Shown here: piece by piece, positions 2,801-62,999 of the stretch
Layout of the letters: each line of letters opens with the position of its first letter
Position numbering within the stretch: the stretch's first letter is position 1
Virus record (IMG/VR): IMGVR_UViG_3300042465_005589
Coordinates: 1 to 64,000 of that record
DNA: 64,000 bases
Strand: one strand, 5' to 3'
Notes under the pieces: generated by a model
Database searches by the model: none
The model's input: only the letters and a program-made list of their open reading frames with translations
What the model was told of the DNA's origin: nothing
Position numbers and translations under genes: made by a program

Positions 2801-2862
2801 CTATATGTCTAAAGTTATTTATCCTATAAATACTTGTGAAATCAGTATTTACTCAACAAACT

Positions 2863-2899
2863 AAAAAAATAAATCCCCCCATTTAATTTGGGGGATTTA
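2863..2899 (-). terminator. intrinsic terminator
   Basis: taaatccccc/gggggattta stem with A7 tract on + (U tract on -), just past the stop of 2907..3542. Confidence 0.75.
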
Positions 2900-2906
2900 A
2901 TATTTG

Positions 2907-3542
2907 TTAATTATTATTTTTTTGAAAATAGTTTTCAATTCTACGGCTTAATCTTATTCTTGGGTCATTTTCATTTCTACCTAAAACATTGTATGGTACT
3001 AAAAAACCAAAACTTAAAAAAACTCTTCGAGAGTTAAACTCCTCTGTCCAATGTTTAAATAAAGACGCTTCAAAACAATATAAATCTTTTTGTTCTATAG
3101 TTGGGGATGATTTATCTATGAAAATTTTATAATCTTCAGATAAAACACTTATATTACATTTGTAATTAATGTATCCTTCAACAGATGCGTCGTAATGTGG
3201 TTGTATTCTACCACCTTTATTCATATCAACCGCTTGAAGAAATACATTGTCAAGAGGTATATTATTTTCCTTTGAAATTCTTTCAAAGATGTCCATTATA
3301 ATTTGTGGGACTTCTTGTTTTGAAACTTTAGAAACTGATTGAAAATTTGTAATGTAGTTTGTAAGTTCAGTATTTGAAATGTCTATAATACAAGATTTAC
3401 CCTTTAGTGCTTTTGAAATTTCACTTAAGTGATAATTGGGGTCACCATCTTCCGGATTTAACGAATCAACCCAACTAACGATTTGTAAAACCTCATCGTC
3501 ATTAATAAACCCTTTTACTATTTTATAATCTTCACTCCCCAT
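2907..3542 (-). CDS. 2OG-Fe(II) dioxygenase-like protein
   Basis: HxD (PHYD), distal H (FKHW) and R (SRRVFLS) pattern of the DSBH fold. Confidence 0.7.
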   Translation of the reverse strand: MGSEDYKIVKGFINDDEVLQIVSWVDSLNPEDGDPNYHLSEISKALKGKSCIIDISNTELTNYITNFQSVSKVSKQEVPQIIMDIFERISKENNIPLDNVFLQAVDMNKGGRIQPHYDASVEGYINYKCNISVLSEDYKIFIDKSSPTIEQKDLYCFEASLFKHWTEEFNSRRVFLSFGFLVPYNVLGRNENDPRIRLSRRIENYFQKNNN

Positions 3543-3766
3543 TTATTAAGGAATTCTTTTGGACCGATTCCTAACTCCATTATAGATAAGTTTTTTTTAT
3601 TGTAAATCAGCATCATTTTTTCTTCAGAACCGGCCATTGTACAAAACCAATGAGTTGCAGGTTCTTCTCCTGTTGGGGAACAAGGTATTTTCATAACATT
3701 TTTATTTACCCAAGATTCTCTAACTTGTTCTACCTTATCGTTTTCTGTTAAAATATTTATTCTCAT
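3518..3766 (-). CDS. hypothetical protein
   Basis: 82-aa ORF tightly packed in the minus-strand operon. Confidence 0.6.
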   Translation of the reverse strand: MRINILTENDKVEQVRESWVNKNVMKIPCSPTGEEPATHWFCTMAGSEEKMMLIYNKKNLSIMELGIGPKEFLNKWGVKIIK

Positions 3767-3767
3767 A

Positions 3768-4010
3768 TTATTTATTTTTTAATAAATTAAGGGATTCTTT
3801 CTTTTCTTCTCTTGACTTCGGTTTACTCTTAAACATATTAAAAACTTCCGTAATTTCTTCAGAAGTATATGTATTAAGTAATGTAGTTTTAGTGTCCTCA
3901 CACTCTCTGTGTGTCATTTCATAAGCATCTTTTGAGTTATCAACCCAAACATCATTTTCTAAAGATTGTAGAAACTTATTATCACTTTTTCTTTTAATAT
4001 ATTTTATCAT
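3768..4010 (-). CDS. hypothetical protein
   Basis: 80-aa ORF, 1-nt spacing to next gene, A-rich leader. Confidence 0.6.
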   Translation of the reverse strand: MIKYIKRKSDNKFLQSLENDVWVDNSKDAYEMTHRECEDTKTTLLNTYTSEEITEVFNMFKSKPKSREEKKESLNLLKNK

Positions 4011-4034
4011 TTTTTTTCAGTTTTAATTTTTTTA

Positions 4035-4997
4035 TTAGTCATTGAAAACATAAAATGTTAATGTGCTATTAGCACAGAACTGAGTTTCAAGATTTGTTGA
4101 CATAGTTAAAATTATGTTCCCACCATCGTCAGAAAACGTACCAAGAAAACTTGTATTAGTATCTGTATTCAATACGGTAACAACTTCAGATATGTCATTA
4201 ACAATAGTACCACCACTTGTGTAAAAAGATTGAATAAACATATCTCCACAATAAAACTCAACACTTACATTTGTGAAAGGAAATGATGTTGTAGTTCCAC
4301 TTATTACTGTTGGTGTGGTATCTAAATCTTGTAGAATTTGAATTTCAATCGAGTAGTAGTATAAACTATTGTCAACTGGTTCAGGAACACTTAAATCAAC
4401 AACAAAAAGAATAATACTATCGTCTTTCTCATTAAAATTATTAGGAAATATAAAAGTTTCTATTGGGTTAGGTCCAAAAATGGGTGTTTGATTCCCACCT
4501 AGAAGGAATGTTGAATTTCTATTAAAAGTATTATACAGTGGGCCTGTAGTTGAATTAAACCCTACATAAACTCCTGTAAAATCCTTAATCCACTCAATAT
4601 CGAATCCCAAGTTATTTTCTAATACTGTTACCACTAAAGTAGCACTAGATACTAAAGTAGAACCGTTATTCCAATTTGTTGGGGTTTCCCCTGTTGCAAT
4701 GAATATACATCCCGTTGTGTCTATAACTCCACTTGTTACATTAGCAATATTACTAAAACTATCACCACTAACATAATTGACTATCGTGTAAGTTTCACCT
4801 ATAATAAAACCACCATTAAGACCACCAAAATCATTTAAGGTTGTGCCGGTCTGAGAACCTATATCAGTTAATAACGCTTTGTAAGTCGCCAAATTTCCTG
4901 TTGTTACACCTGTAACACTTAAATTCCCATTTATGGTTACATTACCATTTATCGTTTGCCCCGATAAATTATCTACAATATATTTTGTTCTTGCCAT
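4035..4997 (-). CDS. putative virion fibre/structural protein
   Basis: T/G/N-rich, fibre-like TINGNVTINGNLSVTG repeat. Confidence 0.55.
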   Translation of the reverse strand: MARTKYIVDNLSGQTINGNVTINGNLSVTGVTTGNLATYKALLTDIGSQTGTTLNDFGGLNGGFIIGETYTIVNYVSGDSFSNIANVTSGVIDTTGCIFIATGETPTNWNNGSTLVSSATLVVTVLENNLGFDIEWIKDFTGVYVGFNSTTGPLYNTFNRNSTFLLGGNQTPIFGPNPIETFIFPNNFNEKDDSIILFVVDLSVPEPVDNSLYYYSIEIQILQDLDTTPTVISGTTTSFPFTNVSVEFYCGDMFIQSFYTSGGTIVNDISEVVTVLNTDTNTSFLGTFSDDGGNIILTMSTNLETQFCANSTLTFYVFND

Positions 4998-4999
4998 TA

Positions 5000-7600
5000 T
5001 TATTCGTTTATATTTATTATGTTTAATACATCACTTCCATCGTAGTAAGATAACCTATTTGATAATGCAGAATTTTTGAAGATATTACAAGTATATAACT
5101 CATAAACTGAAGGGTTTTGACTAATACTTGTAACCGTAATGATTACATCATCAGAATAAACGGATTCAACAATTATGGTTATGTCTTCCGTACTACCAAA
5201 CACATCTCCAGATATTGTTAATAGCTCTCCAACTAAATAACCTGTGCCTCCCTGATTTAACACTACACTACTAACTACTCCGCTAGTAACTGTAACATCA
5301 AAAGATGCGTTTTCACCACTACCCGTACCTTGTGCAAATATATTAGGATATGAACCTGTAACCCCTGTTATTCCAATCCCATTCCCTGAAAATGTAGTAA
5401 TAACACCTGTGTCACCACCAATAGATGTACCTAATATTGTTATTGTATCACCAATAACATATAATTCACCCGCGTTGTTTATAGTAACCCCCGTTACAGT
5501 CCCACCTGAAACCACAATAGTAAATGTTGCGTTAACACCTAAACCGTTAGTTGTACCTGCAATGGCCGTGTATGTATTATTAGTTGTCCCTGTTCCTAAA
5601 TCATTATAAGTAATGCCACTTATGTTCCCATAATTTGTTGTAAAATCAACATTATTTACATAGGTATCAACAATATTCCATTGAAAATAATCACCAATAA
5701 TATTGTTATAGAAGTTATCAGGAATTGTATTGTTGTAAAAGTATTCACCAATAGTATTATTATTAAAATAATTTCCAATTCTATTTCCCTGATTATATGA
5801 ACCTCCAAAACCAAATCCATCTTGAATATCATTACTTCTAAAATCTGTTCCCAGTGTATTGTACGAAAATGAACCATAACAAGTATTAAATTCAAAATAA
5901 TCTCCGATATTGTTATGTATTGTGACTCCACTAAAAGTATTAGGCACACACCCAAATCCTATATTATTATATCCAAACTCCTCAAATATATCATTACCCT
6001 TAAAATCTGTTTTAATTTGGTTACTCCAAAAATTACCTTGAATGTCGTTACCCTTAAAATTATTCATAATTTGGTTGTTTTCAAAAGTAAGTAAGTTGTC
6101 AACTCCACCAATTGTGTTTAGATTGAAACCATTTAATATTGAATTTTTTCTAAAGTCAAAATATATGGTATTAGCATTAAAATCATCACCTATACTATTT
6201 GAGTAGAAAGAGTTTGGTATGATATTGTCATAAAAATTATCACCTATAAAATTGTCATTAAAGGACTGATTAATAATTAGGTTTTGAGAAAAGTCACCGA
6301 CAATAGTATTGTTTTGGAATCCACTATCTATGAGGTTATTATTAAAGCTGTCCCCAATATTATTATTTTGAAAATCGCTATTATTAAACGTTAAGAAATT
6401 ATTTGTGAAATATGAACCTATTCGGTTAAAATCAAAATCTTGTCCATCGGCATCTCCTAACATATTATGTTGAAAATAGTTACCAATCTGATTTGAGTCC
6501 ATATCACAATCAATAATGTTGTATTGAAAATATGAACCTATAATATTTCCGTCAAAATTATTTGTTATTATATTATATTGACAATACGGTCCGACTATAT
6601 TTGAGTTCATAACATCATTGAAGGTATTACCTACCACATTTCCACCGAATGTGTTATTTTCATATGGCCCACTTAAAAATACGTTATTTGATAATATGAA
6701 AATATTATAATCAATATTATTCCCCAAGTATGTGTTATAATTATTCCCATCATTAAATGTATAATACTCCGCAAATTCATCATTAGTTGTTCCTGTGATA
6801 TTACATTGGAATGGATTCATATAGTTAGGTAATCTTATCCCCGCAGAATAATAGACATTACTCACATTTGCTAATGTTCTACCTGTGACATACATTTCAA
6901 CATTACTAACTATCGACGAAATTTCATAATATTGGAAACTAGCTGTCCCATTAATACCAGATGAGTAAACTCCAAAAATATCACCAACAGTAAAATCAGT
7001 TGTGAATGATGTTCCTGATTGTGCTGTAGTAACTTGTCCGGTTGTACCATCCAAATTAATTTTACCATTATAGAATTGTTCTGAAAAATAACCAACATAT
7101 CTTATAAATTGAACCGCTCTGAAATCATAGTCGGCTCTGTTATTAAATTGGTCAATTCTTTCAGTAATTCTACCTTTAGCCGGTCCACCTGTTACTTCTG
7201 TTATATTCCAAGTTATATCGTAAGATATTTTGTCTTGTGGGTGTAATGTTGAGTATACCGTAGGGGAGAATCCTGTTGTTGATATCGCTAACAATAATAT
7301 AGGTTCTGTTGACCCTGTCTTATAATTACCGGTAGCTATTGGGGTACCATTAACATCATAGTTTGGTTGGTCGTAACACGTTTGGAAGTCAGTCATTAAA
7401 TAATAACTTCCTGCGGTTAGTGTTTCACCTGTGGCGAATGAATATAACTCATCGTAAGTTCCTTCGTTATAGTTTGAATTAGTGAATGCCGAATATGCTA
7501 TATGGTATGTATCCCCGCTCAATTCTACGGGAAATAATGTATCGTTTGTTAGAAATTGTAAAAGAGATAATTCTCCGATTGTTTTACCTGTTAATGCCAT
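5000..7600 (-). CDS. putative tail fibre/spike with parallel beta-helix repeats
   Basis: many ~11-aa NxIGxxFxxN repeats; C-terminal beta-rich repeats (GELYVIGDTITI, GTGYLVGELLTI). Confidence 0.7.
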   Translation of the reverse strand: MALTGKTIGELSLLQFLTNDTLFPVELSGDTYHIAYSAFTNSNYNEGTYDELYSFATGETLTAGSYYLMTDFQTCYDQPNYDVNGTPIATGNYKTGSTEPILLLAISTTGFSPTVYSTLHPQDKISYDITWNITEVTGGPAKGRITERIDQFNNRADYDFRAVQFIRYVGYFSEQFYNGKINLDGTTGQVTTAQSGTSFTTDFTVGDIFGVYSSGINGTASFQYYEISSIVSNVEMYVTGRTLANVSNVYYSAGIRLPNYMNPFQCNITGTTNDEFAEYYTFNDGNNYNTYLGNNIDYNIFILSNNVFLSGPYENNTFGGNVVGNTFNDVMNSNIVGPYCQYNIITNNFDGNIIGSYFQYNIIDCDMDSNQIGNYFQHNMLGDADGQDFDFNRIGSYFTNNFLTFNNSDFQNNNIGDSFNNNLIDSGFQNNTIVGDFSQNLIINQSFNDNFIGDNFYDNIIPNSFYSNSIGDDFNANTIYFDFRKNSILNGFNLNTIGGVDNLLTFENNQIMNNFKGNDIQGNFWSNQIKTDFKGNDIFEEFGYNNIGFGCVPNTFSGVTIHNNIGDYFEFNTCYGSFSYNTLGTDFRSNDIQDGFGFGGSYNQGNRIGNYFNNNTIGEYFYNNTIPDNFYNNIIGDYFQWNIVDTYVNNVDFTTNYGNISGITYNDLGTGTTNNTYTAIAGTTNGLGVNATFTIVVSGGTVTGVTINNAGELYVIGDTITILGTSIGGDTGVITTFSGNGIGITGVTGSYPNIFAQGTGSGENASFDVTVTSGVVSSVVLNQGGTGYLVGELLTISGDVFGSTEDITIIVESVYSDDVIITVTSISQNPSVYELYTCNIFKNSALSNRLSYYDGSDVLNIININE

Positions 7601-10386: not shown

Positions 10387-10413
10387 ATAAATACATTAAA
10401 ACGAAGTATTTAT
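10387..10413. promoter_or_regulatory. back-to-back putative late promoter motifs (TATTTAT in gene sense)
   Basis: ATAAATA 10387-10393 serves the minus gene starting at 10376; TATTTAT 10407-10413 serves the plus gene starting at 10427. Confidence 0.6.
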
Positions 10414-13433: not shown

Positions 13434-14654
13434 ATGAAAGAAAAAATAAATGTTTTAGTTCTCGCGTCAGATAAAACAGGCGTAGGGAAATTCAGGTCTT
13501 TAGACCCACATATTAAGTTACAAAATCTATATCCTGACGATTTCCACGTTGATATTGATTATGAACCAAGAATAAATGATATAAAGTATTGGGATAAATA
13601 CCAAATAATCCATGTGCATCGAAATATTGGTAGTCACTATGACCAAACACCATCAATTGTTAAATATTTAAAATCAATTGGTAAAGTGGTTGTTATTGAT
13701 ATTGATGATTATTGGTTACCAACTATTGACCATCCAATACATAGTATTATTGTTCAAAATAAAATTCACGAGAAAATTGTCGCAAACTTAAAAGAAGCTG
13801 ATTGGGTTACAACCACAACTGACATATTCGCCAATGAAATTCGTAAAATCAATAAAAATGTTTTGGTATTACCAAACGCTATTGACCCTAATGAACAACA
13901 ATTTAATCAACCAACACCACCGTCAGATAAAATCAGAATTGGTTGGTTAGGAGGGTCTTCACATTTACACGATTTAAATTTATTAGGTGATTTCGTTCAA
14001 AAGAATCAAGACATTAATGATAAATTACAATATGTAATTTGTGGGTTCGACACAAGAGGTTCTGTAACTGAAATTAATCCACAAACAGGTGAACAAAAGA
14101 AAAGAGATATTCTTCCACACGAAACTGTATGGGTTAATTATGAGGGTATCTTTACAAATAATTACAAAACATTAGATGAAAATTACATTAAATTCTTAAA
14201 GGAATTTAAAGAGAATGAATATATTTCAGATAAAGAATTACCATACGTTAGAGTTTGGACAAAACCGGTTAATTCTTACGCTATGAATTATTCAAAATTT
14301 GATATATCTTTGGCACCGATTAAAAATCACATCTTTAATAGAATGAAATCTCAATTAAAAGTAATTGAGGCAGGATTCTATAAGAAAGCATTAATTGCGT
14401 CTGAAATTGGACCATATACTATAGATTTAAAACATTGTTTAAAAAATGGGGTATTCACCGACGAAGGAAATGCGATTTTAATCCCTGAAAGTAGGAACCA
14501 TAGTGATTGGTCTAAATCAATTAAAAAATTAGTTCAGAATCCTGAAATGATAACTGAGTTAGGAGAGAGATTATATAATACCGTAAAAGACAAATATGAC
14601 CTTAATAAAGTAACGGTTACAAGAGCGGAGTTTTACAAAAGTTTAATCAAATAA
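13434..14654 (+). CDS. glycosyltransferase, GT-B fold (GT4-like)
   Basis: DIDDYW, IGWLGGSSH, DISLAP...FN..KS.LKVIEAG motifs. Confidence 0.8.
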   Translation: MKEKINVLVLASDKTGVGKFRSLDPHIKLQNLYPDDFHVDIDYEPRINDIKYWDKYQIIHVHRNIGSHYDQTPSIVKYLKSIGKVVVIDIDDYWLPTIDHPIHSIIVQNKIHEKIVANLKEADWVTTTTDIFANEIRKINKNVLVLPNAIDPNEQQFNQPTPPSDKIRIGWLGGSSHLHDLNLLGDFVQKNQDINDKLQYVICGFDTRGSVTEINPQTGEQKKRDILPHETVWVNYEGIFTNNYKTLDENYIKFLKEFKENEYISDKELPYVRVWTKPVNSYAMNYSKFDISLAPIKNHIFNRMKSQLKVIEAGFYKKALIASEIGPYTIDLKHCLKNGVFTDEGNAILIPESRNHSDWSKSIKKLVQNPEMITELGERLYNTVKDKYDLNKVTVTRAEFYKSLIK

Positions 14655-16064: not shown

Positions 16065-16071
16065 TATTTAT
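16065..16071 (+). promoter_or_regulatory. putative late promoter motif for the endonuclease and the IntC-dUTPase gene
   Basis: TATTTAT 20 nt upstream of ATG 16092. Confidence 0.5.
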
Positions 16072-22119: not shown

Positions 22120-23220
22120 TTATAAAGTCATTCTATTTGAATGATTAGATTTTATTTTTTCCATTGAGATTTCAATTGGTAAACACTTGTCACTAAAATA
22201 ATTTATTTGGTTAAACAATGTTTCATGGTTTTTAATCTTGTTAACATAATTATTTGTATCTAATAGTTCTTCAGTTAATATTTCATCAACAATTTTTGAG
22301 TATTCTATATTGGAAATACCTTCCTTATTTGGTAAAACTAAACAACTTTCTTTTAAATCAATATCTTTAGTGAATATTTTTTGGTATAATAACAATTCTT
22401 CTTCGGATAGTATTGGTACTATATTATAAGCAAAACACTGATAAAAAGATATTCTAGTTGGGGTATCCCCTCTTAACACAAACAAATATTTTGTTTTCAT
22501 TAATTCCTCTTCTATATTTAACATACTACCAATATAAACTTCTGTTTTTAATTGTAGTATAAAACTTCTAATTCTATTAAGTAATGGTCTAGACTCTGAA
22601 TGTAAAGAACCAATAAATGTTAGGTCATATTTTTTTTCACAACTTATAATTTTTTTTATAGAAGGAAGTGAAAATAAACTATTACTATTCAACACATATG
22701 GAATCGTAATTATTCTGTCGTATGTACCCATTTTAAAAGTTGTGGTAGTATTAAAAAAAGATACCTCATCCTCATAGCTTAAAATAAAAATATCCTTGTC
22801 GATTGATTCAAAAGAAGTTTCAAATAAAACATAACTATATAAAATAAAATGCGGAATTTTTAAATTTGATTCTACGTTATTTTTAATAAAATTATCCCAA
22901 TAAAATTTAATAAAATTTTCTTTATACCCAACACCAAACGTAGGTGGTTGAACTTTTGGGATTAAATCAGAATACTTGTCATAACTTTTTAAATGAATAA
23001 AAAGTTTGTTATGATTACTAGGGGTTATAGACCCATAAATCAATCTAATAAAGTCTATCGGTATGAAAGCAATATCAGATTCATTGATATCATCAACCAC
23101 TTCATATTTTAATTTTAGTTTATCCAAAAATATATTGTATAAATCCATTTCAGGTGGTAAGGACTCAAAAAATGACATAATTTTTTCTAATTCTTTGATA
23201 TTATAAATAAAAATCTTCAT
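22120..23220 (-). CDS. exostosin (GT47)-like glycosyltransferase
   Basis: start MKIFIYN (23220); ADIAFIP-like, IPY, TFIGS, LFVLRGDTPTRISFYQ...VPI. Confidence 0.7.
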   Translation of the reverse strand: MKIFIYNIKELEKIMSFFESLPPEMDLYNIFLDKLKLKYEVVDDINESDIAFIPIDFIRLIYGSITPSNHNKLFIHLKSYDKYSDLIPKVQPPTFGVGYKENFIKFYWDNFIKNNVESNLKIPHFILYSYVLFETSFESIDKDIFILSYEDEVSFFNTTTTFKMGTYDRIITIPYVLNSNSLFSLPSIKKIISCEKKYDLTFIGSLHSESRPLLNRIRSFILQLKTEVYIGSMLNIEEELMKTKYLFVLRGDTPTRISFYQCFAYNIVPILSEEELLLYQKIFTKDIDLKESCLVLPNKEGISNIEYSKIVDEILTEELLDTNNYVNKIKNHETLFNQINYFSDKCLPIEISMEKIKSNHSNRMTL

Positions 23221-23241
23221 ACTTATTAAATATAAGTCTAT

Positions 23242-25794: not shown

Positions 25795-25821
25795 AATTAA
25801 AAACATTAATTTAATAGAGAA

Positions 25822-25860
25822 GATAAGTGACTATATTTTAGTTTACTTATCTTTTTTTTT
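25822..25860 (+). terminator. possible intrinsic terminator
   Basis: gataagt...acttatc stem followed by T9. Confidence 0.55.
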
Positions 25861-25877
25861 ATATAACTTTTATTGAT

Positions 25878-27823: not shown

Positions 27824-28630
27824 ATGGAAAATTACTTTGACGTATCAGTTATATTACCGATTAAATCGGCAACCGTACCATTTTTTGAGGATTACTTTAA
27901 AAAATGTATCGAATCATTAAATAATCAAAAATTAAGAATTAATGAATTAGTCATTGTTCATACAAATGAAACACCATTAGTAGAACTTATTAAAGATTAT
28001 GATTTTGGTGATTTAAATGTTGTTAAATTAGAATGGGATAAAGACCCTAATTATGCCGCACAAGTTAATCATGGTGTTAGAAATTCTAAATCTGAATGGA
28101 TTTCATTATTTGAATTTGACGATGAGTACTCAAATATATGGTTTAAAAATGTTAACGTTTATGCAAACGCATATCCTAATATCGACGCATTTTTACCAAT
28201 AGTTGTTGATACAGACCAAAAAGGTAAATTTGCTGGATTTACTAATGAAGCTACTTTCGCGGCAAACTTTACACCTGAAATGGGTATTTTAACACATGAT
28301 ACTTTATTAGATTATCAAAATTTCCAATCATCAGGAATGGTAATTAAAAAATCAAAATTTGTTGATTATGGATTATTTAAACCATCGTTTAAATTAACGT
28401 TTGGATATGAATTATTCTTACGATTAACACATAATTCCATTAACATAATGTCTATACCGAGAATTGGTTATAAACATACAAATTTAAGAGATGGTTCAAT
28501 CTTTTGGAATTACAAAAATGGTAGAGATATTTTAACTCCGGAAGAAGTTAAATTTTGGATTGAATCCGCAAAAAAAGAATATTTTTTCATTAATGACAGA
28601 GCAATAAAATTTGAATCTCAAGAATCTTAA
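27824..28630 (+). CDS. GT2-like glycosyltransferase
   Basis: VSVILPI, CIESLNNQ, N.GV, WISLFEFDD. Confidence 0.7.
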   Translation: MENYFDVSVILPIKSATVPFFEDYFKKCIESLNNQKLRINELVIVHTNETPLVELIKDYDFGDLNVVKLEWDKDPNYAAQVNHGVRNSKSEWISLFEFDDEYSNIWFKNVNVYANAYPNIDAFLPIVVDTDQKGKFAGFTNEATFAANFTPEMGILTHDTLLDYQNFQSSGMVIKKSKFVDYGLFKPSFKLTFGYELFLRLTHNSINIMSIPRIGYKHTNLRDGSIFWNYKNGRDILTPEEVKFWIESAKKEYFFINDRAIKFESQES

Positions 28631-29379
28631 TGAATGAAAATATTAATTTAACAGGAGATACAAATGTTGAGTTAAAAAAGAAAGGTAGAAAACCAACACA
28701 AGCAAATTATTTTGATGTTAGAGAAGAATTAGCTGTAGTCAGATTTTTAGAATCATCCTCGTATGAAGAAAAAAATAAGATTTACAACGAATTTTTAAAA
28801 AAACCTTTAGACAAGATGATATCTTCAATTATTAGAAGATACAAATTATATAGAAAAGACATGGATTTCACTGATATACATGTAGACACTCACTCGTTTT
28901 TAATGACTAAAATAGATAAGTTTAAACCTTCTCGTGAAAAGAAGGCTTATTCTTATTTTGGTACAATATGTAAAAACTATTTAATGGGTCAAATCATTAA
29001 AGACCAAAAAGAAACCAATAGAAAAATATCGTATGAAGATATTTCATCAAATTTAGAAAATAATGAAAACTTCGCGTATTATATTGAGAATGATAGTTTA
29101 GATTCTGAAAAAGTTATTAAACACTTTTTAATTGAATTAGAGAGATTTATCAAGGAAGAAAATTTATCGGAAAATGAGATTAAACTAGGTCACGCTCTTT
29201 ATGATATTTTTGAAAATTACGATTCAATATTTATTGGAAATGATAATAACAAATTTAATAAAAATATTATTTTATTGTCTTTAAGAGAGATGACTAATCT
29301 TTCAACAAAAGAAATTAGAGGGTCAATGAGAAAATACAAAAATATGTATTACACATTGATTCAAAATATGGTTAATTAA
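28630..29379 (+). CDS. putative late-transcription sigma factor (T4 gp55-like)
   Basis: NYF...; KFKPSREKKAYSYFGTICKNYL resembles sigma region 2 of gp55 (FDP...AYFTQI). Confidence 0.6.
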   Translation: MNENINLTGDTNVELKKKGRKPTQANYFDVREELAVVRFLESSSYEEKNKIYNEFLKKPLDKMISSIIRRYKLYRKDMDFTDIHVDTHSFLMTKIDKFKPSREKKAYSYFGTICKNYLMGQIIKDQKETNRKISYEDISSNLENNENFAYYIENDSLDSEKVIKHFLIELERFIKEENLSENEIKLGHALYDIFENYDSIFIGNDNNKFNKNIILLSLREMTNLSTKEIRGSMRKYKNMYYTLIQNMVN

Positions 29380-29406
29380 AAAACAATAAATTAAATATTT
29401 ATCATT

Positions 29407-33489: not shown

Positions 33490-33511
33490 TATTTATATAT
33501 AAAACATTTAT

Positions 33512-34990: not shown

Positions 34991-35010
34991 TATATTTATA
35001 AATAAAAAAT

Positions 35011-37421: not shown

Positions 37422-37449
37422 ATACTTATAAATATACAAAATTTTAATT

Positions 37450-39150: not shown

Positions 39151-39205
39151 ATTTTTCTTTTTATATAAATACATTATTATTTATTTAAACTTAATATTTG
39201 TGCAT

Positions 39206-42695: not shown

Positions 42696-42812
42696 TTGTG
42701 TTTAAGTTATTTTAATATATAAATATCTCCCATTATTAAAAAATCATTATTTTTAATAATTTGGTGTTGAGTTTTTTTATAACTATAAATATTACCAAAA
42801 AAATAAAAGCAT

Positions 42813-43089: not shown

Positions 43090-43815
43090 TTAATGACCTA
43101 AATAATCGTTTAATTTTTTCATTAAGTCAAGTGATTTATTACCTGAATTACCAACATGTCTTTCAACACTCATTCTTTTCTCTTCATCTAAGTTTTCATC
43201 ATACAAACTTTTATCCTCTTTATTTAAAAATAGGTATGCTCCCGGTGTTGAAGGTGAAGACACTAAGTCAAAACAAATTAATTCAAAATCATCTTGTACT
43301 TCGTTTTGGTCACCAATTTTTTTAAGTGACCCAACACCCCTTGATGATATACCTAAAGTAACTCCTTGTCTTAAGTAATTTGCAGCTAAATCTCCTTTAG
43401 TTGAACAGATACCTCTTTCATGGTAACCCGGTGATGTCAATAATTTAATCTTTCCCATTAAGACGTTACCTTCCCACCATACTTCAGTGATTGCATGAGA
43501 AACTCTATCTAAATCAATTAGTGATGATTCCGGGTGATTTAACTCTGATAGAGCAGTACCCTTTTTAATCATTTTTTTATAATTCTCAGATTCTCTTTTT
43601 AATATACGTTCAGGGTATAATCTACCATTTCTATTTGGGGTGTCATATTTTTGTAATACGGCATAAAATTCAAATGGTTTTGAGTGGTCCAACATCTCGC
43701 TAGATTCTCTAATTAAAGTTTCGTTACGATTATCCTTTGGGTTAATATAACCCGCATCGTATTCAACTAATATACCTTTTCCTGATTCATTCGGTTGTAA
43801 TATTTTTAAACTCAT
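43090..43815 (-). CDS. prohead protease (T4 gp21-like)
   Basis: NRNGRLYP, ELNHP, VSH, GISSRGVGS, FDLVSSPSTPGA. Confidence 0.93.
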   Translation of the reverse strand: MSLKILQPNESGKGILVEYDAGYINPKDNRNETLIRESSEMLDHSKPFEFYAVLQKYDTPNRNGRLYPERILKRESENYKKMIKKGTALSELNHPESSLIDLDRVSHAITEVWWEGNVLMGKIKLLTSPGYHERGICSTKGDLAANYLRQGVTLGISSRGVGSLKKIGDQNEVQDDFELICFDLVSSPSTPGAYLFLNKEDKSLYDENLDEEKRMSVERHVGNSGNKSLDLMKKLNDYLGH

Positions 43816-43838
43816 TTTAAATGTTTTAATAATAAATA

Positions 43839-45312: not shown

Positions 45313-45332
45313 TTTCTTTTTAATTATAAATA

Positions 45333-47189: not shown

Positions 47190-47246
47190 ATGAAAAATTT
47201 AAATATTTTTTTATTTTAATAAATAGTTGAGATTAATCAATTATTA

Positions 47247-47930: not shown

Positions 47931-47950
47931 TTATGTTTATTTGATAAATA

Positions 47951-49720
47951 TTATCTATTCCCAAATAACCAGCCGTATTTTAGATAATCGTCTTTACTTA
48001 TATTACCATTACTGAATTGACCAACTCTTTCATTGGTGTTAGGAATTACAGGGTTAAACGATATGGCTTCTCTAACATTATCATTATTACTAATCGACCA
48101 AGAATCAATCATCGCTTTGGTATGTTCAGTCACTTTTGTTAATTTACTGAATGAAGATTCTGCAACATATGTCGCCATAGCAATCGACATAATTAAATCG
48201 TCGTGATGACCCTTTTGATGGTCAGGTCGACCATTCATATAGATAAATGTATTCATTTCGTTATATAGTCTTGAACTATATATCCTGAACCCGTGTCTCA
48301 TAACTTCTTCATAAGACGCTATAATTTGTACCCTCTTATTGTTAAAGTTAATACCAGGTATTTTTTCAGCAGCTTTTGGGTCGTACTTCCATTTGTTCGC
48401 GGAATCAACACCATCAATGTATAAATCTTTGAAATTCATTTCCTGTAACTTTCTCGCTGTCGATACTCCCATTCCACCTGTAATATCAATAACGACAAAA
48501 CAAGAATATAATGTTGCCCATTTGTGACAAATTTCCGCCATCGTATCGGGGGGTAATTTTCCAACATATTCAGCAACTTGTTCCATAGTGTCAAAATCAA
48601 CAATTTGAAAAGAACTAAAATCTTCTGAATCTCCACGAGAAACGTCAACACCCATGATATATTTATGTCCAACAATAGGGTCTTTCCAAATCCAAAGAGC
48701 GTTACCCATTCTTTTACTTATTGGTTCTAAAATCATGTTTTCACGAATCTTATTCATCATAATAGAATCAAATACGTTATCACCCGAACCTAAAAAGTTA
48801 CATTCTAACTCCTGAGATACTTTACGTTTATCGTATTTTAATTTTTTAACCATCGCCTCAAACCAAGAAGAACAAGGTTTAAAACCGGCATCCATAATAA
48901 TTCTTAATTCTTTGTAATTTCTATCCTCATATGGTATTTTAGCCCAATCAATAATGTCGTCCGGTTTGTAATCTTCTTTATTTAATAAATAATGAATAAC
49001 ATCCTCAGTTTTAACTAAATATAAATCTTTAGTATAACGTGGGTCACGATACCAAAACATTTCTGTAATTTTGAAATCATTCATATTACGTAATGCTTGG
49101 TCATATATCTCATAATAAATCGCGTCATAACCATTAGGTGTGGAGACAACAATTACTTTACCACCCGTAGATAGAGAAGCCATACAGGCAGCCCAAAAGT
49201 CACTATCAGCCTCAATAAAGGCTGCCTCATCAAATATAAGTATGGTTGGTGTAAATCCACGTAAGGCATCCTTAGATGTCGCAACGGCTTTAACCTCACA
49301 CCCATTTGTTAATTTATAATGTTTTTGAGAATTTTTTGTTTTGTCAAAGTCAACACCTGTCCAAGAAGGCCATTGACCAACAAACGCTTTTATTTTATTA
49401 GCCATCTCTAATGAGGTGTCTAATTTATTGGCGATAATTAGAATTTTTTCAGGGGTTTCTTTTCTTGCGAATACAAGTTTTCGTGACATCCAAGCCGCAG
49501 TAACTGTTGATACTCCGGCTTGTCTATACTTCAATGCAATGTTTTCATTGTATTCTTCGTAATCTTGGAGTAAGGATAATTGGTCAGGAAAAAGTTCCAA
49601 TGGAACATATTTTTTAACTGTATTATCGTATGTTTCTAAATACGTTTTGAGTGCGTACTCAACATCTCTACTACATTTTACGTATTCTATTAATACTTGT
49701 TCTTTAGTTAAATTTGACAT
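47951..49720 (-). CDS. terminase large subunit
   Basis: KYRQAGVST, LIFDEAAF, STPNG, GVDVSRG, HDDL. Confidence 0.93.
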   Translation of the reverse strand: MSNLTKEQVLIEYVKCSRDVEYALKTYLETYDNTVKKYVPLELFPDQLSLLQDYEEYNENIALKYRQAGVSTVTAAWMSRKLVFARKETPEKILIIANKLDTSLEMANKIKAFVGQWPSWTGVDFDKTKNSQKHYKLTNGCEVKAVATSKDALRGFTPTILIFDEAAFIEADSDFWAACMASLSTGGKVIVVSTPNGYDAIYYEIYDQALRNMNDFKITEMFWYRDPRYTKDLYLVKTEDVIHYLLNKEDYKPDDIIDWAKIPYEDRNYKELRIIMDAGFKPCSSWFEAMVKKLKYDKRKVSQELECNFLGSGDNVFDSIMMNKIRENMILEPISKRMGNALWIWKDPIVGHKYIMGVDVSRGDSEDFSSFQIVDFDTMEQVAEYVGKLPPDTMAEICHKWATLYSCFVVIDITGGMGVSTARKLQEMNFKDLYIDGVDSANKWKYDPKAAEKIPGINFNNKRVQIIASYEEVMRHGFRIYSSRLYNEMNTFIYMNGRPDHQKGHHDDLIMSIAMATYVAESSFSKLTKVTEHTKAMIDSWSISNNDNVREAISFNPVIPNTNERVGQFSNGNISKDDYLKYGWLFGNR

Positions 49721-53808: not shown

Positions 53809-53949
53809 TTGTTAATTTTTTATAAAATTATTTTATTTATAAATATATTCAGAATTAAGAATGTTAAGATTCTGGTATATTTTTATGGTTTAGTAAAAAC
53901 TTTTTTAAATTATTTATCTATAAATAGTTGGGAATTAAAAAAAAAATGT

Positions 53950-56174: not shown

Positions 56175-56204
56175 TATCAATAAATACTTAAAAATGTATA
56201 ATTG

Positions 56205-56447
56205 TTAAACTTTTTTGTATTTGAATTTTTTAGATATATCTGTAGTAAAGTATTTCCCTTGAGAATCAGCTAATCTAAATTTGGTATAAACATTATGAGG
56301 TACATCTTCATATTCATATTTCGTCCCATTTTTAAATTCCGCAATCATTTTTTTAGTTGATGTATCGTACTCAGTTCTTACGATGTTTGTTGACTCAATC
56401 TCATTAATGATTTTAGTCCCGTTTATTATTTCTCTTTTTACTGCCAT
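56205..56447 (-). CDS. KTSC-domain protein
   Basis: ESTNI....YD......EFKNG..YEY..VP..VY..F..A.SQGKYF. Confidence 0.85.
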   Translation of the reverse strand: MAVKREIINGTKIINEIESTNIVRTEYDTSTKKMIAEFKNGTKYEYEDVPHNVYTKFRLADSQGKYFTTDISKKFKYKKV

Positions 56448-56745
56448 TTCCTAAAGGTGTTTTTAAGTCGATTATTTTTAGTTTATCCATAAGATAATCA
56501 TTAAACTCATTAAGGTCAACATCACCGAAAAAACTTCTTATTTCAGAAAATATTCTATCTTTCGACCTTGAAAATTTTTGGAAATTACCCATAATATCGG
56601 TTGGGTAATATGGGGGACTTTTTAAATCATCATCGCTCCACCCCTCTCGTTGGAATGCCTTACGTAAATTGTAGTAAGTATCAATTAGTTCATTATCAAC
56701 ACCTAATGTATCAATATACTTCATCCAATGTTTTTTATGTGTCAT
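56413..56745 (-). CDS. hypothetical protein
   Basis: 110 aa; late motif 56750-56756. Confidence 0.6.
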   Translation of the reverse strand: MTHKKHWMKYIDTLGVDNELIDTYYNLRKAFQREGWSDDDLKSPPYYPTDIMGNFQKFSRSKDRIFSEIRSFFGDVDLNEFNDYLMDKLKIIDLKTPLGNGSKKRNNKRD

Positions 56746-56770
56746 GTTTATAAATATAATTCAAATTTGT

Positions 56771-58919: not shown

Positions 58920-59741
58920 TTAAAATGATTTAAAATACTTACTGTCAACTTTAAACGGGTACTTTTTATATCCCAACCCCTCAATCATCTTTTTACCTGT
59001 CTCTATTCCACTATAAACATCTTCAACAACAACATACTCATTTGGGGTGTGATAGTTGTAATAACCTATCGCAAAATTGATACAGGAGAAATCAAAGATA
59101 TTCTTTAATGCGTAAACATCAGTATATGGATGTGATTGATAATCATGTCTCCCATTAAATCCTTCATTCAATGCAACATCACAAATATTAAAGAATTCAC
59201 CACCTCTTTCAAACAGTTGTGTCCCCATACAATATTCGCTTACCATAACATTTCCCGGAGCGTCAAACTGAATACCGTATCCAACATTTAAAAAGAAATT
59301 TGGGTCGGCTTTTTTGGACCCATGACATCCGGTTTCTTCTGATACAAAGAAAGCGGCTTTTAAATTTGGTAATTCTTTCAATAGTTCCAAACAAGCAAAA
59401 ACTCCACATTTATCGTCTCCCCCAATACCAGTTGGGTGTCCGAAATGATTATAAGCCTTTAACGATGGTTTAGGTATTTTTTGTTCATTTGGTAATATTT
59501 CCTCACGAATAATAATATTGTCTAAAGAGTGAACAGTATCTGTATGTGCAATAACACAAGGAAAGTAATCAATAAATTCGTCCGTTTGTTTAACAGCGTA
59601 AATATTTTTATGTTCGTCCACATTGAAGGGAATCCCATTTTGTTCTAACCAATTGATTAGAAATTCTACCATAAGGTCTTCTTGATAAGTTTTTGTCGGG
59701 ACCGACAAGACTTGTTTTAATAATTCATAATCTTTTTCCAT
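58920..59741 (-). CDS. M20/M28-clan zinc peptidase-like protein
   Basis: AHTDTV, GGDDKCG, EETGCHGS, YTD, YHTPNE. Confidence 0.8.
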   Translation of the reverse strand: MEKDYELLKQVLSVPTKTYQEDLMVEFLINWLEQNGIPFNVDEHKNIYAVKQTDEFIDYFPCVIAHTDTVHSLDNIIIREEILPNEQKIPKPSLKAYNHFGHPTGIGGDDKCGVFACLELLKELPNLKAAFFVSEETGCHGSKKADPNFFLNVGYGIQFDAPGNVMVSEYCMGTQLFERGGEFFNICDVALNEGFNGRHDYQSHPYTDVYALKNIFDFSCINFAIGYYNYHTPNEYVVVEDVYSGIETGKKMIEGLGYKKYPFKVDSKYFKSF

Positions 59742-59753: not shown

Positions 59754-59783
59754 GGGAAAATAATTAAAAATTTAAAGATAACA

Positions 59784-61148: not shown

Positions 61149-61180
61149 TGATATTTATTTTAATAATAAATATAATTTTA

Positions 61181-61211
61181 TTTGGATTTATCCAAAAATG
61201 TATTATCTTTG
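61181..61211 (+). promoter_or_regulatory. Bacteroidota sigma-A promoter for tmRNA
   Basis: TTTG 61181-61184, 19-nt spacer, TATCTTTG 61204-61211. Confidence 0.7.
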
Positions 61212-61225
61212 TGGTATCAAAATAT

Positions 61226-61619: not shown

Positions 61620-61626
61620 CAAAAAG

Positions 61627-61654
61627 AAAAACCCATCATACGATGGGTTTTTTT
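61627..61654. terminator. bidirectional intrinsic terminator
   Basis: aaaacccatc-atac-gatgggttttttt. Confidence 0.85.
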
Positions 61655-61678
61655 GTTATCAGTTCAAATGTTTATTTT

Positions 61679-62038
61679 TTAATCTTGTAATAAATCCTTT
61701 GTTACCGGATTTAATTTAGTTACTAATTTATCTAATCTTGAATCAATAGTTCTATATACCTCATCAAGACCTTTGTTTGTATCCTCAGCTCTAGCATTTA
61801 TATATCTATTGGTCTCAGCATACAATTCGTCGGTTCGTTTAATCTCACCATCTATACGACGATGTAGGTCATCACCTGTTCTATTTATTTCTGTGAAGAT
61901 GTGTCCTTGTACTTGTTCCAATTGGGAACATTTATTTTTTAATCTTTTAATCTGAATGTACATCATAACCACAACTCCAACTCCCAGTACCCCGAGAACC
62001 AAAACTATACCCATAATGAACGATGTTAAATCTACCAT
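61679..62038 (-). CDS. single-TM coiled-coil membrane protein
   Basis: N-terminal hydrophobic helix FIMGIVLVLGVLGVGVVVMMYI followed by heptads. Confidence 0.7.
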   Translation of the reverse strand: MVDLTSFIMGIVLVLGVLGVGVVVMMYIQIKRLKNKCSQLEQVQGHIFTEINRTGDDLHRRIDGEIKRTDELYAETNRYINARAEDTNKGLDEVYRTIDSRLDKLVTKLNPVTKDLLQD

Positions 62039-62078
62039 AATTTCTTTTTTTTTATTTGTTTATTATTGAACTGATAAT

Positions 62079-62459
62079 TTATTGTTTAACTCCTCCCCAC
62101 AAATAACCATCACCATATGAAGTACATATTTCTTCACCGGGTTGGATTGTTTGTAAAGAGTAAAATTGAAATGCTCGTTTAGTTGGGTGATTTCTCCACA
62201 TTGCGTTATTAGTATCTGAATGATTATATATACATCCATACCCTAATGGTATCACATATTCAGTCCAATTTGGTCCTTGAGGATAACAAAATCTATAATC
62301 ATCAAGTAATCTTGATTGTTCCCATTTTTTTGTTGGTAAAGTCACTAAATGACATTCTTCAATCAACTCATCTTTTTCAATGACATCAATTGCAAATACC
62401 CCCATTCCTTTTCCTGGAGAGGGTTTAATCTCTATTTTGGTCGGTATTAATAAATTCAT
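62079..62459 (-). CDS. SET-domain protein (putative lysine methyltransferase)
   Basis: GKGMGVFA, YNHS, I.PGEEICTSYG. Confidence 0.88.
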   Translation of the reverse strand: MNLLIPTKIEIKPSPGKGMGVFAIDVIEKDELIEECHLVTLPTKKWEQSRLLDDYRFCYPQGPNWTEYVIPLGYGCIYNHSDTNNAMWRNHPTKRAFQFYSLQTIQPGEEICTSYGDGYLWGGVKQ

Positions 62460-62473
62460 AAGTAAATTATAAT

Positions 62474-62502
62474 AAAAAAAGAGACTATTTCAAGTCTCTT
62501 TT
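62474..62502 (-). terminator. intrinsic terminator after smpB
   Basis: aaaaaaagagact...agtctctttt. Confidence 0.7.
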
Positions 62503-62922
62503 CATATCTCTTTCAATGTCCCGAGATTTAATACTGTCTCGTTTATCGTATGTCTTCTTTCCTTTGGCAAGAGCAATCTCCATCTTAACTAACCCGGTAT
62601 CATTTATGAATACACGATAAGGAACGATGGTGGTTCCGTTGATTAGTTCGTTCTCCAATTTATTAAGTTCTTTTCGTTTAAGTAATAGTTTTCTATCCTT
62701 TACGGTCTCGTGAAAGGACCCGAACCCATAATCAGAGATATTCATTCCCTTTATAAACAACTCACCATTGTTGAAGTAACAAAACCCCTCAGATATGGAG
62801 ACCTTTCCCTGACGGATGGACTTTACCTCTGAACCAACTAGTTTGATTCCCACGATTAGTGTCTGTAGGAATGAATACTCAAACTTGGCTTTCTTATTGA
62901 CTATGTTAATTGATTTTTTCAT
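62485..62922 (-). CDS. smpB: SsrA-binding protein SmpB
   Basis: NKKAKFEY, GIKLVGSEVKSIR, RKLLL, ALAKGKKTYDKR. Confidence 0.96.
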   Translation of the reverse strand: MKKSINIVNKKAKFEYSFLQTLIVGIKLVGSEVKSIRQGKVSISEGFCYFNNGELFIKGMNISDYGFGSFHETVKDRKLLLKRKELNKLENELINGTTIVPYRVFINDTGLVKMEIALAKGKKTYDKRDSIKSRDIERDMKRDLK

Positions 62923-62926
62923 ACGA

Positions 62927-62934
62927 CAAAGATA
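62927..62934 (-). promoter_or_regulatory. Bacteroidota sigma-A -7 element
   Basis: TATCTTTG on minus strand, 4 nt before smpB ATG. Confidence 0.6.
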
Positions 62935-62999
62935 ATGATTTTTTTTCTAATAATTATGACTTTTTATACTTTTTGAGATATTTATAATAAAGAGATATT

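What the first reader, a model, noticed from the sequence alone, without database searches (positions are those of the whole stretch)
2825..62985. Late regulon marked by sense-strand TATTTAT, the reverse complement of the T4 late promoter
Seen: TATTTAT lies 4-30 nt upstream of about 20 starts in gene-sense orientation (plus: 10407, 16065, 29396, 33490, 34993, 62979; minus, read as ATAAATA on +: 2826, 7618, 10387, 37428, 39165, 42719, 43832, 45326, 47219, 47944, 53839, 56180, 56750, 61166). It also corrects several over-long starts in the ORF track. Known: T4 gp55 recognises TATAAATA. Inference: the gp55-like protein at 28630 reads a distinct TATTTAT(A) box; an alternative is an RNA-level UAUUUAU translation enhancer.
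Basis: partly seen in the sequence, partly recalled or inferred. Interest (0 to 1): 0.6.

Follow-up and report, generated by a model that had tools for sequence, protein, structure and literature searches.

The report
Phage late-type promoter box TATTTAT
The motif is real: a T4-related giant phage of freshwater Bacteroidota marks about a third of its genes, including its virion genes, with a TATTTAT promoter box. The box differs from T4's TATAAATA at two bases, often starts transcripts right at the ATG, and travels with a very divergent relative of the T4 late sigma factor gp55.

Summary
Observation confirmed. All 20 listed TATTTAT sites exist, in gene-sense orientation, 4-30 nt before an ATG start. 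I found one more at 23203(-).

The total count in the window is not above chance (66 vs 61). The placement is. Genome-wide (318 kb), sense TATTTAT in co-directional intergenic DNA occurs 62 times vs 9.5±3.0 in dinucleotide shuffles. The antisense count is 12 vs 13.4.

The refined motif is a-TATTTAT-N4-AAA. Spacing to the ATG is bimodal: a spike at exactly 4 nt (26 genes), a near-empty gap at 7-12, and a broad peak at 13-24. This fits a promoter whose transcripts start about 5 nt after the box, giving leaderless and leadered mRNAs.

The phage's host-type promoters (TTTG / TAnnTTTG) show the same N4-ATG geometry.

Motif and spacing are conserved in relatives while the flanks vary. The box also precedes virion genes in two cultured phages, Flavobacterium phage immuto and Microcystis phage Mel-JY01.

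ORF 28630-29379 is a sigma-like protein whose N-terminal half resembles T4 gp55. Its family is present in both cultured phages. Immuto has no canonical sigma region 2, whereas this genome has a second, canonical sigma.

"Late" is only partly shown, because helicase and polymerase genes carry the box too. This is a new variant of a known kind.

The parts
28630..29379 (+). Sigma-like protein (249 aa, P0001). Its N-terminal sigma-2-like domain resembles T4 gp55, and it has an extra conserved C-terminal helical domain. It is the candidate reader of the TATTTAT box.
   Evidence: It is the only phrog_234 (gp55) hit in the genome, E 0.005. 45 of 68 family members hit Sigma70_r2. A PDB profile search finds SigA region 2 at E 0.0045 and gp55 at E 0.37. 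The AF2 model has pLDDT 90.5. VIA-align against gp55 7d7c_F gives Z 10.9, rmsd 3.2 A over 113 aa. hhalign against gp55 gives E 2.4e-4. The protein has no HExxH motif, so the JGI label 'SprT' is wrong.
2826..2832 (-). TATTTAT box, 25 nt before ATG 2800 (gene 2-2800, cut by the contig end)
7618..7624 (-). TATTTAT box, 17 nt before ATG 7600 (866-aa gene 5000-7600)
10387..10393 (-). TATTTAT box, 10 nt before ATG 10376 (741-aa gene). It sits back to back with the box at 10407 in a 50-nt divergent gap.
10407..10413 (+). TATTTAT box, 13 nt before ATG 10427
16065..16071 (+). TATTTAT box, 20 nt before ATG 16092 (endonuclease-like gene, the first of a long + strand block)
23203..23209 (-). It shortens ORF 22120-23265.
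29396..29402 (+). TATTTAT-N4-ATG: predicted leaderless start of gene 29407-29784, directly behind the sigma-like gene
   Evidence: In 42 distinct relatives the box is kept in 41, and 40 have a spacing of 4 (28), 5 (6) or 6 (6), while the spacer and the upstream flank vary.
33490..33496 (+). TATTTAT box, 15 nt before ATG 33512
34993..34999 (+). TATTTAT box (full consensus TATTTATAAATAAA), 11 nt before ATG 35011
37428..37434 (-). TATTTAT box, 6 nt before ATG 37421. It corrects the TTG start at 37439.
39165..39171 (-). TATTTAT box, 14 nt before ATG 39150. It corrects the start at 39174.
42719..42725 (-). TATTTAT box, 23 nt before ATG 42695. It heads the two-gene unit 41145-42695 plus the major capsid gene 39256-41112.
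   Evidence: Lake metatranscriptome contigs cover 39.3-42.64 kb and thin out beyond that point. These are contigs only, so the support is weak.
43832..43838 (-). TATTTAT box, 16 nt before ATG 43815 (gp21-like prohead protease 43090-43815)
45326..45332 (-). TATTTAT box, 13 nt before ATG 45312. It corrects the TTG start at 45336.
47219..47225 (-). TATTTAT box, 29 nt before ATG 47189 (gp20-type portal gene)
   Evidence: In 56 distinct relatives ACTATTTA is conserved while the upstream flank is unalignable.
47944..47950 (-). TATTTAT box, 13 nt before ATG 47930
53839..53845 (-). TATTTAT box (full consensus), 30 nt before ATG 53808. It heads a run of five genes that ends with the large terminase (47951-49720).
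56180..56186 (-). TATTTAT box, 5 nt before ATG 56174. It corrects the TTG start at 56180 and is near-leaderless.
56750..56756 (-). TATTTAT-N4-ATG: predicted leaderless start of gene 56413-56745
61166..61172 (-). TATTTAT box, 17 nt before ATG 61148 (454-aa gene)
62979..62985 (+). TATTTAT box, 14 nt before ATG 63000

Best explanation
TATTTAT is the core, -10-type element of a phage-specific promoter class. The fuller form is a-TATTTAT-N4-AAA, with an A/T-only tract about 15 nt upstream and no -35 box.

Transcription is inferred to start at the A that lies 5 nt after the last T, which puts the box at about -11 to -5. Where that A is the A of an ATG, the mRNA is leaderless. This applies to 26 genes genome-wide and 2 in the window, plus 2 window genes with a spacing of 5-6. 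Elsewhere an A-rich leader of about 9-25 nt without a Shine-Dalgarno sequence follows, as is usual in Bacteroidota.

The class drives the virion and packaging genes: the portal, prohead protease, capsid unit, terminase unit, sheath and tube. It also drives some replication genes. It stands beside a separate set of about 55 host-type early promoters (TTTG ... TAnnTTTG).

The most likely reader is host core RNA polymerase carrying the phage sigma-like protein of ORF 28630-29379, a very divergent gp55 relative with an added C-terminal domain.

What is shown: the motif, its strand, its position and spacing, its conservation, and its co-occurrence with the protein family. What is inferred: the start site, the timing, and which sigma reads the box.
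For: **Enrichment and strand bias.** z = 17 against dinucleotide shuffles, with no antisense excess. TATTTAT is the top 7-mer before starts.

**Motif model.** An EM run seeded with the box converges on a-TATTTAT-wwww-AAA at about 115 of 420 gene fronts. An EM run seeded with T4's TATAAATA drifts away. Sense TATAAATA occurs only 5 times in co-directional gaps.

**Spacing.** Box-to-ATG spacing is bimodal: 26 genes at N = 4, 11 at 5-6, 4 at 7-12, and a broad peak at 13-24. The reverse-complement control is flat.

**Host-type promoters.** The phage's own host-type promoters show the same geometry, with six TAnnTTTG-N4-ATG cases.

**Comparative data.**
- In 42 distinct relatives of the 29396 site, the box is kept in 41 and spacing stays at 4-6 nt in 40, while the spacer letters and the flank change.
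- The portal-gene box is conserved in 56 relatives whose upstream flanks are unalignable.
- A contig whose sigma-like protein is only 32% identical has AACTATTTA at syntenic places.

**Cultured phages.**
- Flavobacterium phage immuto has TATTTAT(A) before its terminase, portal, sheath and virion genes.
- Microcystis phage Mel-JY01 has TATTTAT 30-45 nt upstream of the portal-position, tube and other genes, with GGAG ribosome sites in between. There the box is not part of the ribosome-binding region.

**Link to the sigma-like family.** The family profile finds a homologue in immuto (E 1.9e-35) and in Mel-JY01 (E 9.9e-30). Immuto has no Sigma70_r2 match at all.

**gp55 likeness.**

**Gene classes.**
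Against: - No transcription start, timing or binding data exist. The metatranscriptome runs are assembled contigs and cannot show RNA 5' ends.
- The gp55 likeness is weak by sequence: 14 bits to phrog_234, and PDB profile E 0.37.
- By fold, the match is tied within about 1.5 Z units with ordinary sigma-2 domains.
- The genome has a second, canonical sigma behind an early-type promoter. That sigma could read the box in this phage.
- A contig with a 36%-identical sigma-like protein and 53% GC shows no TATTTAT. It has a recurrent AAACGAC instead, so the family does not always go with this box.
- The helicase (258178-259563) and DNA polymerase (292761-295550) genes also carry the box, so 'late only' is not shown.
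- No gp45 clamp or gp33 was detected. This may only reflect divergence.
Confidence: 0.62

Rival explanations
1. The box is a promoter, but it is read by another factor. Candidates are the phage's canonical sigma (r1.2-r2-r4, 209549-210349) or host sigma-A modified by phage proteins. On this view the 28630 protein has another role.
For: The canonical sigma exists and lies behind a strong early-type promoter, so it would be made in time. The box shares T1, A2, T5 and T7 and the same start-site geometry with the host -7 box TAnnTTTG. A GC-rich relative has the 28630 family without the box.
Against: Phage immuto has the box before its virion genes but no Sigma70_r2 match at E <= 1, while it has a clear 28630-family gene. 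The box lacks the -33 TTTG and the final G of host promoters and forms a separate class. Mel-JY01 carries the box although, by its record and its GGAG ribosome sites, its host is not a Bacteroidota.
Confidence: 0.17
2. The box acts in RNA, as UAUUUAU. It would be an A/U-rich translation enhancer, or a processing site that cuts polycistronic RNA just before the start codon.
For: The box is close to the start codon (4-30 nt) and A/U-rich. Bacteroidota lack Shine-Dalgarno pairing and favour A/U-rich leaders. Fixed spacing (N4) could also suit a ribosome or nuclease contact. Many boxes lie inside runs of same-strand genes, where read-through RNA would contain them.
Against: The bimodal spacing, with an almost empty 7-12 nt zone, is not expected of an enhancer. 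The DNA-level host promoters show the identical N4-ATG class. In Mel-JY01 the box lies 30-45 nt upstream with a GGAG site between it and the ATG. Two boxes stand back to back in a divergent 50-nt gap (10387/10407). The box co-occurs with a sigma-like family.
Confidence: 0.1
3. There is no function: the pattern is a by-product of A/T-rich intergenic composition.
For: The genome has 31% GC. The total count of TATTTAT in the window equals the shuffled expectation.
Against: Sense count is 62 against 9.5±3.0 in dinucleotide shuffles of the same intergenic DNA, with no antisense excess. There is a sharp spacing spike. The box is conserved while flanks diverge.
Confidence: 0.01

Closest known systems
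T4-type late promoter (TATAAATA, read by gp55 with gp33 and the gp45 clamp); NATAAATA in cyanophage S-PM2 (PMC2984593)
   Same: It is a single A/T-rich element of about 8 bp in the -10 region on the sense strand, with no -35 box. It sits in front of virion genes of a phage with T4-type capsid, portal, terminase, sheath and tube genes. Six of eight positions are identical (TATTTATA vs TATAAATA). As in T4-like phages that lack MotA/AsiA, some replication genes also carry the late-type box (PMC2984593).
   Different: The two central bases are T,T instead of A,A. The T4 octamer itself is not enriched in sense orientation here (5 copies). The inferred start lies 5 nt after the 7-mer, about 2 nt closer than in T4 (the T4 figure is from my own knowledge). 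A large leaderless subclass exists. No gp33 or gp45 was detected.
T4 gp55 late sigma factor (PDB 7d7c chain F; phrog_234)
   Same: The N-terminal half (residues 26-143) superposes on gp55 with Z 10.9 and 3.2 A over 113 of 137 residues. hhalign gives E 2.4e-4. It is the only phrog_234 hit in this genome and in phage immuto. It lies next to glycosyltransferase genes, as gene 55 lies near a-gt in T4.
   Different: It has 249 aa against 185. An extra conserved C-terminal helical domain aligns with the C-terminal parts of full-length sigmas. Sequence scores fall far below family level. It is annotated as 'hypothetical' or wrongly as 'SprT protease' in public records.
Bacteroidota sigma-A promoters (-33 TTTG / -7 TAnnTTTG; the consensus is from my own knowledge of the Bacteroides and Flavobacterium literature)
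   Same: The start-site geometry is the same (box-N4-A). T1, A2, T5 and T7 are shared. Both are followed by A-rich leaders without a Shine-Dalgarno sequence. This genome holds about 55 such host-type promoters, many of the strong form TTTGG...TATTATCTTTGTACC.
   Different: The TATTTAT class has A for T at position 6, no final G and no -33 TTTG. It precedes a different, largely non-overlapping gene set: 12 of 135 genes carry both.
Flavobacterium phage vB_FspM_immuto_2-6A (NC_055915.1) and Microcystis phage Mel-JY01 (PP395634.1)
   Same: These are the closest cultured relatives, with major capsid protein 40-43% identical. Both have the TATTTAT(A) box before virion genes and a 28630-family gene.
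   Different: Their genomes are half the size (160 and 190 kb). Immuto lacks a canonical sigma. Mel-JY01 uses GGAG ribosome sites and long leaders. I found no description of the box for either phage.

Membership tests
T4-type late promoter | Octamer TATAAATA on the sense (non-template) strand | tested here: not met
   The consensus is TATTTAT(A), 6 of 8 identical. Sense TATAAATA occurs 5 times in co-directional gaps against 36 for TATTTATA. An EM run seeded with TATAAATA does not hold.
T4-type late promoter | Single -10-region element, no -35 box | tested here: met
   The position matrix of 112 sites shows no conserved upstream element, only an A/T-only tract 14-17 nt before the box.
T4-type late promoter | Precedes virion (late) genes | tested here: met
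   The portal, prohead protease, sheath and tube genes each have a box directly upstream. The capsid and terminase genes lie in units headed by a box. The helicase and polymerase genes have a box too, so it is not exclusive to late genes.
T4-type late promoter | Transcripts start a few nt downstream, late in infection, dependent on gp55, gp33 and gp45 | not testable with these tools
   Only assembled metatranscriptome contigs were available. The start is inferred from the N4-ATG spike. gp33 and gp45 were not detected.
gp55 (T4 late sigma) | Sequence membership (phrog_234) | tested here: inconclusive
   It is the only hit in the genome, but at E 0.005 and 14.3 bits. The same holds in immuto, at E 0.008. 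hhalign against gp55 gives E 2.4e-4, probability 43%.
gp55 (T4 late sigma) | Sigma-2-like fold as in 7d7c chain F | tested here: met
   Z 10.9, rmsd 3.2 A, 113 aligned residues. The match is tied within about 1.5 Z with other sigma-2 domains.
gp55 (T4 late sigma) | Small protein (185 aa) without a sigma-4 domain; C-terminal clamp-binding tail | tested here: not met
   The protein has 249 aa, with five further helices at residues 135-248 that are conserved in the family. A clamp-binding tail was not tested.
Sigma-70 family | Region 2 above Pfam's cut-off | tested here: inconclusive
   This protein scores 14-15.5 bits against a cut-off of 24. 45 of 68 family members match at E <= 0.1, the best at 5e-7. 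The top 50 Foldseek rows are all sigma factors.
Bacteroidota sigma-A promoter | -7 box TAnnTTTG with -33 TTTG | tested here: not met
   The TATTTAT class lacks the final G and the -33 box. True examples of the host type form a separate class of about 55 genes.
Leaderless mRNA | Transcript 5' end at, or within a few nt of, the start codon | not testable with these tools
   This is inferred from the spike at box-N4-ATG (26 genes) and its conservation in relatives. No 5'-end data exist.

The most novel reading that the evidence does not exclude
The 28630 family may be a gp55-derived sigma that has gained a sigma-4-like C-terminal domain. It would then run late transcription without the sliding-clamp and gp33 activation that defines T4. 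That would uncouple late gene expression from replication in a large, abundant clade of aquatic T4-related phages (1118 clusters at 50% identity). With its TATTTAT box placed 5 nt from the start, it would also make many late mRNAs leaderless.
Probability: 0.2. Interest if true: 0.75.

Novelty: new variant of a known kind. Interest (0 to 1): 0.6.

Why it matters
T4's late promoter and gp55 are textbook examples of minimal promoter recognition. TATAAATA or NATAAATA has been reported in T4, KVP40 and the cyanophages (PMC2984593). Here a deep, very abundant aquatic branch of T4-related phages uses a two-base variant instead. This branch includes freshwater and marine metagenomes and two cultured phages.

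The probable reader is a sigma-like family so divergent that public records call it 'hypothetical' or 'SprT protease'.

Practical gains:
- a simple rule to find promoters and correct start codons in these genomes;
- a name for a family of more than 1000 protein clusters;
- a predicted set of leaderless phage mRNAs in Bacteroidota;
- a cultured system (phage immuto on Flavobacterium sp. LMO8) in which all of this can be tested.

Tried and rejected
- **blastn of the window against GenBank phages:** no match.
- **EM from random seeds:** found only the A-rich start-codon context and terminator hairpins. Seeded EM was needed.
- **T4 box embedded in the consensus TATTTATAAATA (a palindrome):** considered, but positions after the 7-mer are only weakly conserved and the TATAAATA seed does not hold.
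- **Family scans of large proteins:** PHROGs or Pfam scans of about 40 large proteins gave mostly nothing. The early/late classification therefore rests on a dozen T4 homologues found by phmmer.
- **gp45 clamp, gp33, gp44/62:** no hit. The polymerase itself scores only E 5.6e-5, so absence is not shown.
- **Third promoter class:** TTGACA-type boxes were scanned and gave a few candidates but no clear class.
- **The search for related loci with the family alignment:** Single proteins and the look-up of encoding contigs were used instead.
- **Metatranscriptomes:** four runs hold relatives' contigs over the capsid unit. Depth falls beyond about 42.64 kb, but contigs cannot show a start.
- **ORF 71235-71975:** its weak sigma region 4 hits come from a GIY-YIG endonuclease with HTH domains, not a sigma.
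- **Literature search for TATTTAT as a phage promoter:** nothing relevant.

Full report
**Setting**

The window is the first 64 kb of a single 318,164-bp virus contig with 31% GC. It carries several T4-type genes:
- a major capsid gene (39256-41112, -), a gp20-type portal gene (45333-47189, -) and a T4-type large terminase (47951-49720, -);
- a gp21-like prohead protease (43090-43815);
- elsewhere in the genome, sheath, tube, gp25, primase, helicase, polymerase and NrdA homologues.

Start codons are preceded by A-rich tracts without Shine-Dalgarno sequences. The genome also holds many copies of TTTG...TAnnTTTG, the promoter form of Bacteroidota sigma-A (the consensus is from my own knowledge). 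The host is therefore most likely a Bacteroidota. Relatives are very common in lake and other aquatic metagenomes and metatranscriptomes.

**The observation**

All 20 sites exist as stated, and there is a 21st at 23203(-). The total number of TATTTAT copies in the window equals the shuffled expectation (66 against 61), so the case rests on placement.

- Genome-wide, TATTTAT is the most over-represented 7-mer in the 60 nt before ORF starts: 97 in sense against 11.9 expected.
- Of its 334 copies, 128 lie in the 7% of the genome that is intergenic.
In co-directional intergenic DNA the sense count is 62 against 9.5±3.0 in 1000 dinucleotide-preserving shuffles. The antisense count is 12 against 13.4.
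- Convergent gaps hold 4 copies. Divergent gaps hold 22 and 23 on the two strands, as expected if each strand serves one gene.

**The motif**

An expectation-maximisation run seeded with the box settles on a-TATTTAT-wwww-AAA at about 115 of 420 gene fronts, with the central TTT most conserved. A run seeded with T4's TATAAATA drifts away. An A/T-only tract lies 14-17 nt before the box, and there is no -35-like element.

It is also the same octamer with two central A-to-T changes on the same strand. Given the strict sense orientation, that is the simpler description.

**Spacing and the start site**

The distance from the box to the first usable ATG is bimodal:

| Spacing (nt) | Genes |
|---|---|
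| exactly 4 | 26 |
| 5-6 | 11 |
| 7-12 | 4 |
| 13-24 | broad peak |

The reverse-complement control is flat. In leadered sites the positions that the ATG occupies in the N4 class are AAA.

This pattern is what a promoter gives when transcripts start at the A that lies 5 nt after the box. Either the A belongs to the ATG and the mRNA is leaderless, or a leader long enough for the ribosome follows.

Two independent checks agree.
1. The host-type promoters of the same genome have the same subclass, with six TAnnTTTG-N4-ATG cases.
2. In 42 distinct relatives of the site behind the sigma-like gene (29396), the box is kept in 41. The spacing is 4 (28 sequences), 5 (6) or 6 (6), while the four spacer letters, the upstream flank and even the length of the gap vary.

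The portal-gene box is likewise conserved in 56 relatives whose upstream flanks cannot be aligned. There the seventh position varies, so TATTTA is the hard core.

**DNA or RNA element**

The RNA-enhancer alternative is made unlikely by four points:
- the empty 7-12 nt zone;
- the identical geometry of the DNA-level host promoters;
- back-to-back boxes in the 50-nt divergent gap at 10387/10407;
- Microcystis phage Mel-JY01, where TATTTAT lies 30-45 nt upstream of virion genes with a GGAG ribosome site in between.

It cannot be excluded without 5'-end data. The four metatranscriptomes I could lay on the capsid region are assembled contigs. They cover 39.3-42.64 kb and thin out past the predicted start near 42714, which is compatible but proves nothing.

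**Which genes**

- Boxes stand directly before the portal, prohead protease, sheath and tube genes.
- Boxes head the units that contain the capsid and terminase genes.
- Boxes stand before many large unknown proteins.
- NrdA, the SbcC-like gene and the primase gene have none.
- The helicase and polymerase genes do have one.

About 55 genes, shorter on average, have host-type promoters, and 12 have both.

In T4-like phages without MotA/AsiA, replication genes are reported to carry early plus late promoters (PMC2984593). The pattern here is therefore compatible with a late-type class, but timing is not shown.

ORF 28630-29379 has no Pfam or PHROG hit on its own. It belongs to a family of 1118 clusters at 50% identity.

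- 45 of 68 aligned members touch Sigma70_r2.
- The family profile finds SigA region 2 (E 0.0045) and gp55 (E 0.37) in the PDB.
- The AlphaFold model (pLDDT 90.5) returns only sigma factors among the top 50 Foldseek rows.
- With VIA-align, T4 gp55 is the best low-rmsd match (Z 10.9, 3.2 A, 113 residues), ahead of sigma-E and RpoS region 2 by about 1.5 Z.
- The gp55 PHROG finds this ORF and nothing else in the genome. In phage immuto it again finds only the homologue of this ORF.
- hhalign gives E 2.4e-4 against gp55 and 0.05 against the phage's own canonical sigma.
- The protein is longer than gp55 and has a conserved C-terminal helical domain.
- The JGI label 'SprT protease' is not borne out: there is no HExxH motif.

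A second sigma, with regions 1.2, 2 and 4, lies at 209549-210349 behind an early-type promoter.

Co-occurrence separates the two candidates. Phage immuto has the box before its virion genes and a clear homologue of the 28630 family (E 1.9e-35, gp118, annotated 'hypothetical'). It has no Sigma70_r2 match at all. Mel-JY01 also has both the box and the family. A 53%-GC contig with a 36%-identical family member lacks the box and shows a recurrent AAACGAC instead. Specificity therefore seems to have shifted within the family.

**Verdict**

The promoter reading is well supported by sequence statistics and comparative data. The link to the 28630 protein is supported by co-occurrence and by a weak but consistent gp55 likeness. 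'Late' and the exact start site remain inferences.

I found no earlier description of this box. It is a new variant of the T4-type late promoter system, with an unannotated sigma family and a leaderless subclass as added value.

Noticed in passing
G000 209549-210349 (-), outside the window: A second, canonical phage sigma factor (Pfam regions 1.2, 2 and 4, all above cut-off). It lies directly behind gene 210351-210926, which has a strong host-type TTTG/TATCTTTG promoter. Its target promoters are unknown; a few TTGACAT...TATnnT candidates exist (for example near 219371 and 153614), but they form no clear class.
   Followed up: partly
whole genome; in the window upstream of the starts at 35976, 37724, 53984, 56857, 58920-59741 (-) and 62485-62922 (-): About 55 genes have Bacteroidota-type promoters, many of the near-identical form AAATTTGG-N-ATTAAAAAA-N-GTATTATCTTTGTACC. 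Six have TAnnTTTG-N4-ATG, which predicts leaderless early mRNAs as well.
   Followed up: partly
G000 about 65,100-88,000 (loci L003, L004): A block of about 23 tRNA genes, all on the - strand and covering most amino acids. Several small 'ORFs' of my mechanical gene list there are tRNA DNA.
   Followed up: partly
window 1-2800 and G000 312217-318158: The first 2.8 kb has 42% GC with long open frames in several phases. The gene 2-2800 (-) is cut by the contig start. At the other contig end lies an 1876-aa collagen-like tail-fibre gene. The contig may be a circularly permuted complete genome (CheckV completeness 100).
   Followed up: no
window 13434-14654, 26758-27822, 27824-28630: Three glycosyltransferase genes sit in the + strand block that ends with the sigma-like gene. 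The GT-2 gene overlaps the sigma-like start and is also its neighbour in distant relatives (L105). This recalls a-gt near gene 55 in T4 and suggests sugar modification of DNA or of the virion.
   Followed up: no
window 25820-25868: A clean hairpin (AGATAAGT...ACTTATCT) followed by a run of nine T behind gene 25051-25794. It is probably an intrinsic terminator inside the long + strand block. The promoter that serves the genes after it, including the sigma-like gene, was not identified.
   Followed up: no
L105 (ENA ERZ16268066 scaffold_430, 53% GC): A GC-rich relative with a 36%-identical sigma-like gene in conserved gene order. It has a recurrent AAACGAC 8-15 nt before many starts instead of TATTTAT, and TAnnTTTG boxes elsewhere. 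This may be a re-tuned promoter specificity within the same sigma family.
   Followed up: partly
PP395634.1 (Microcystis phage Mel-JY01), locus L116: This phage shares the capsid (43% identity), the sigma-like family and the TATTTAT box with Bacteroidota phages. It uses GGAG ribosome sites and encodes a ribosomal protein S21 gene in its head-gene block.
   Followed up: no
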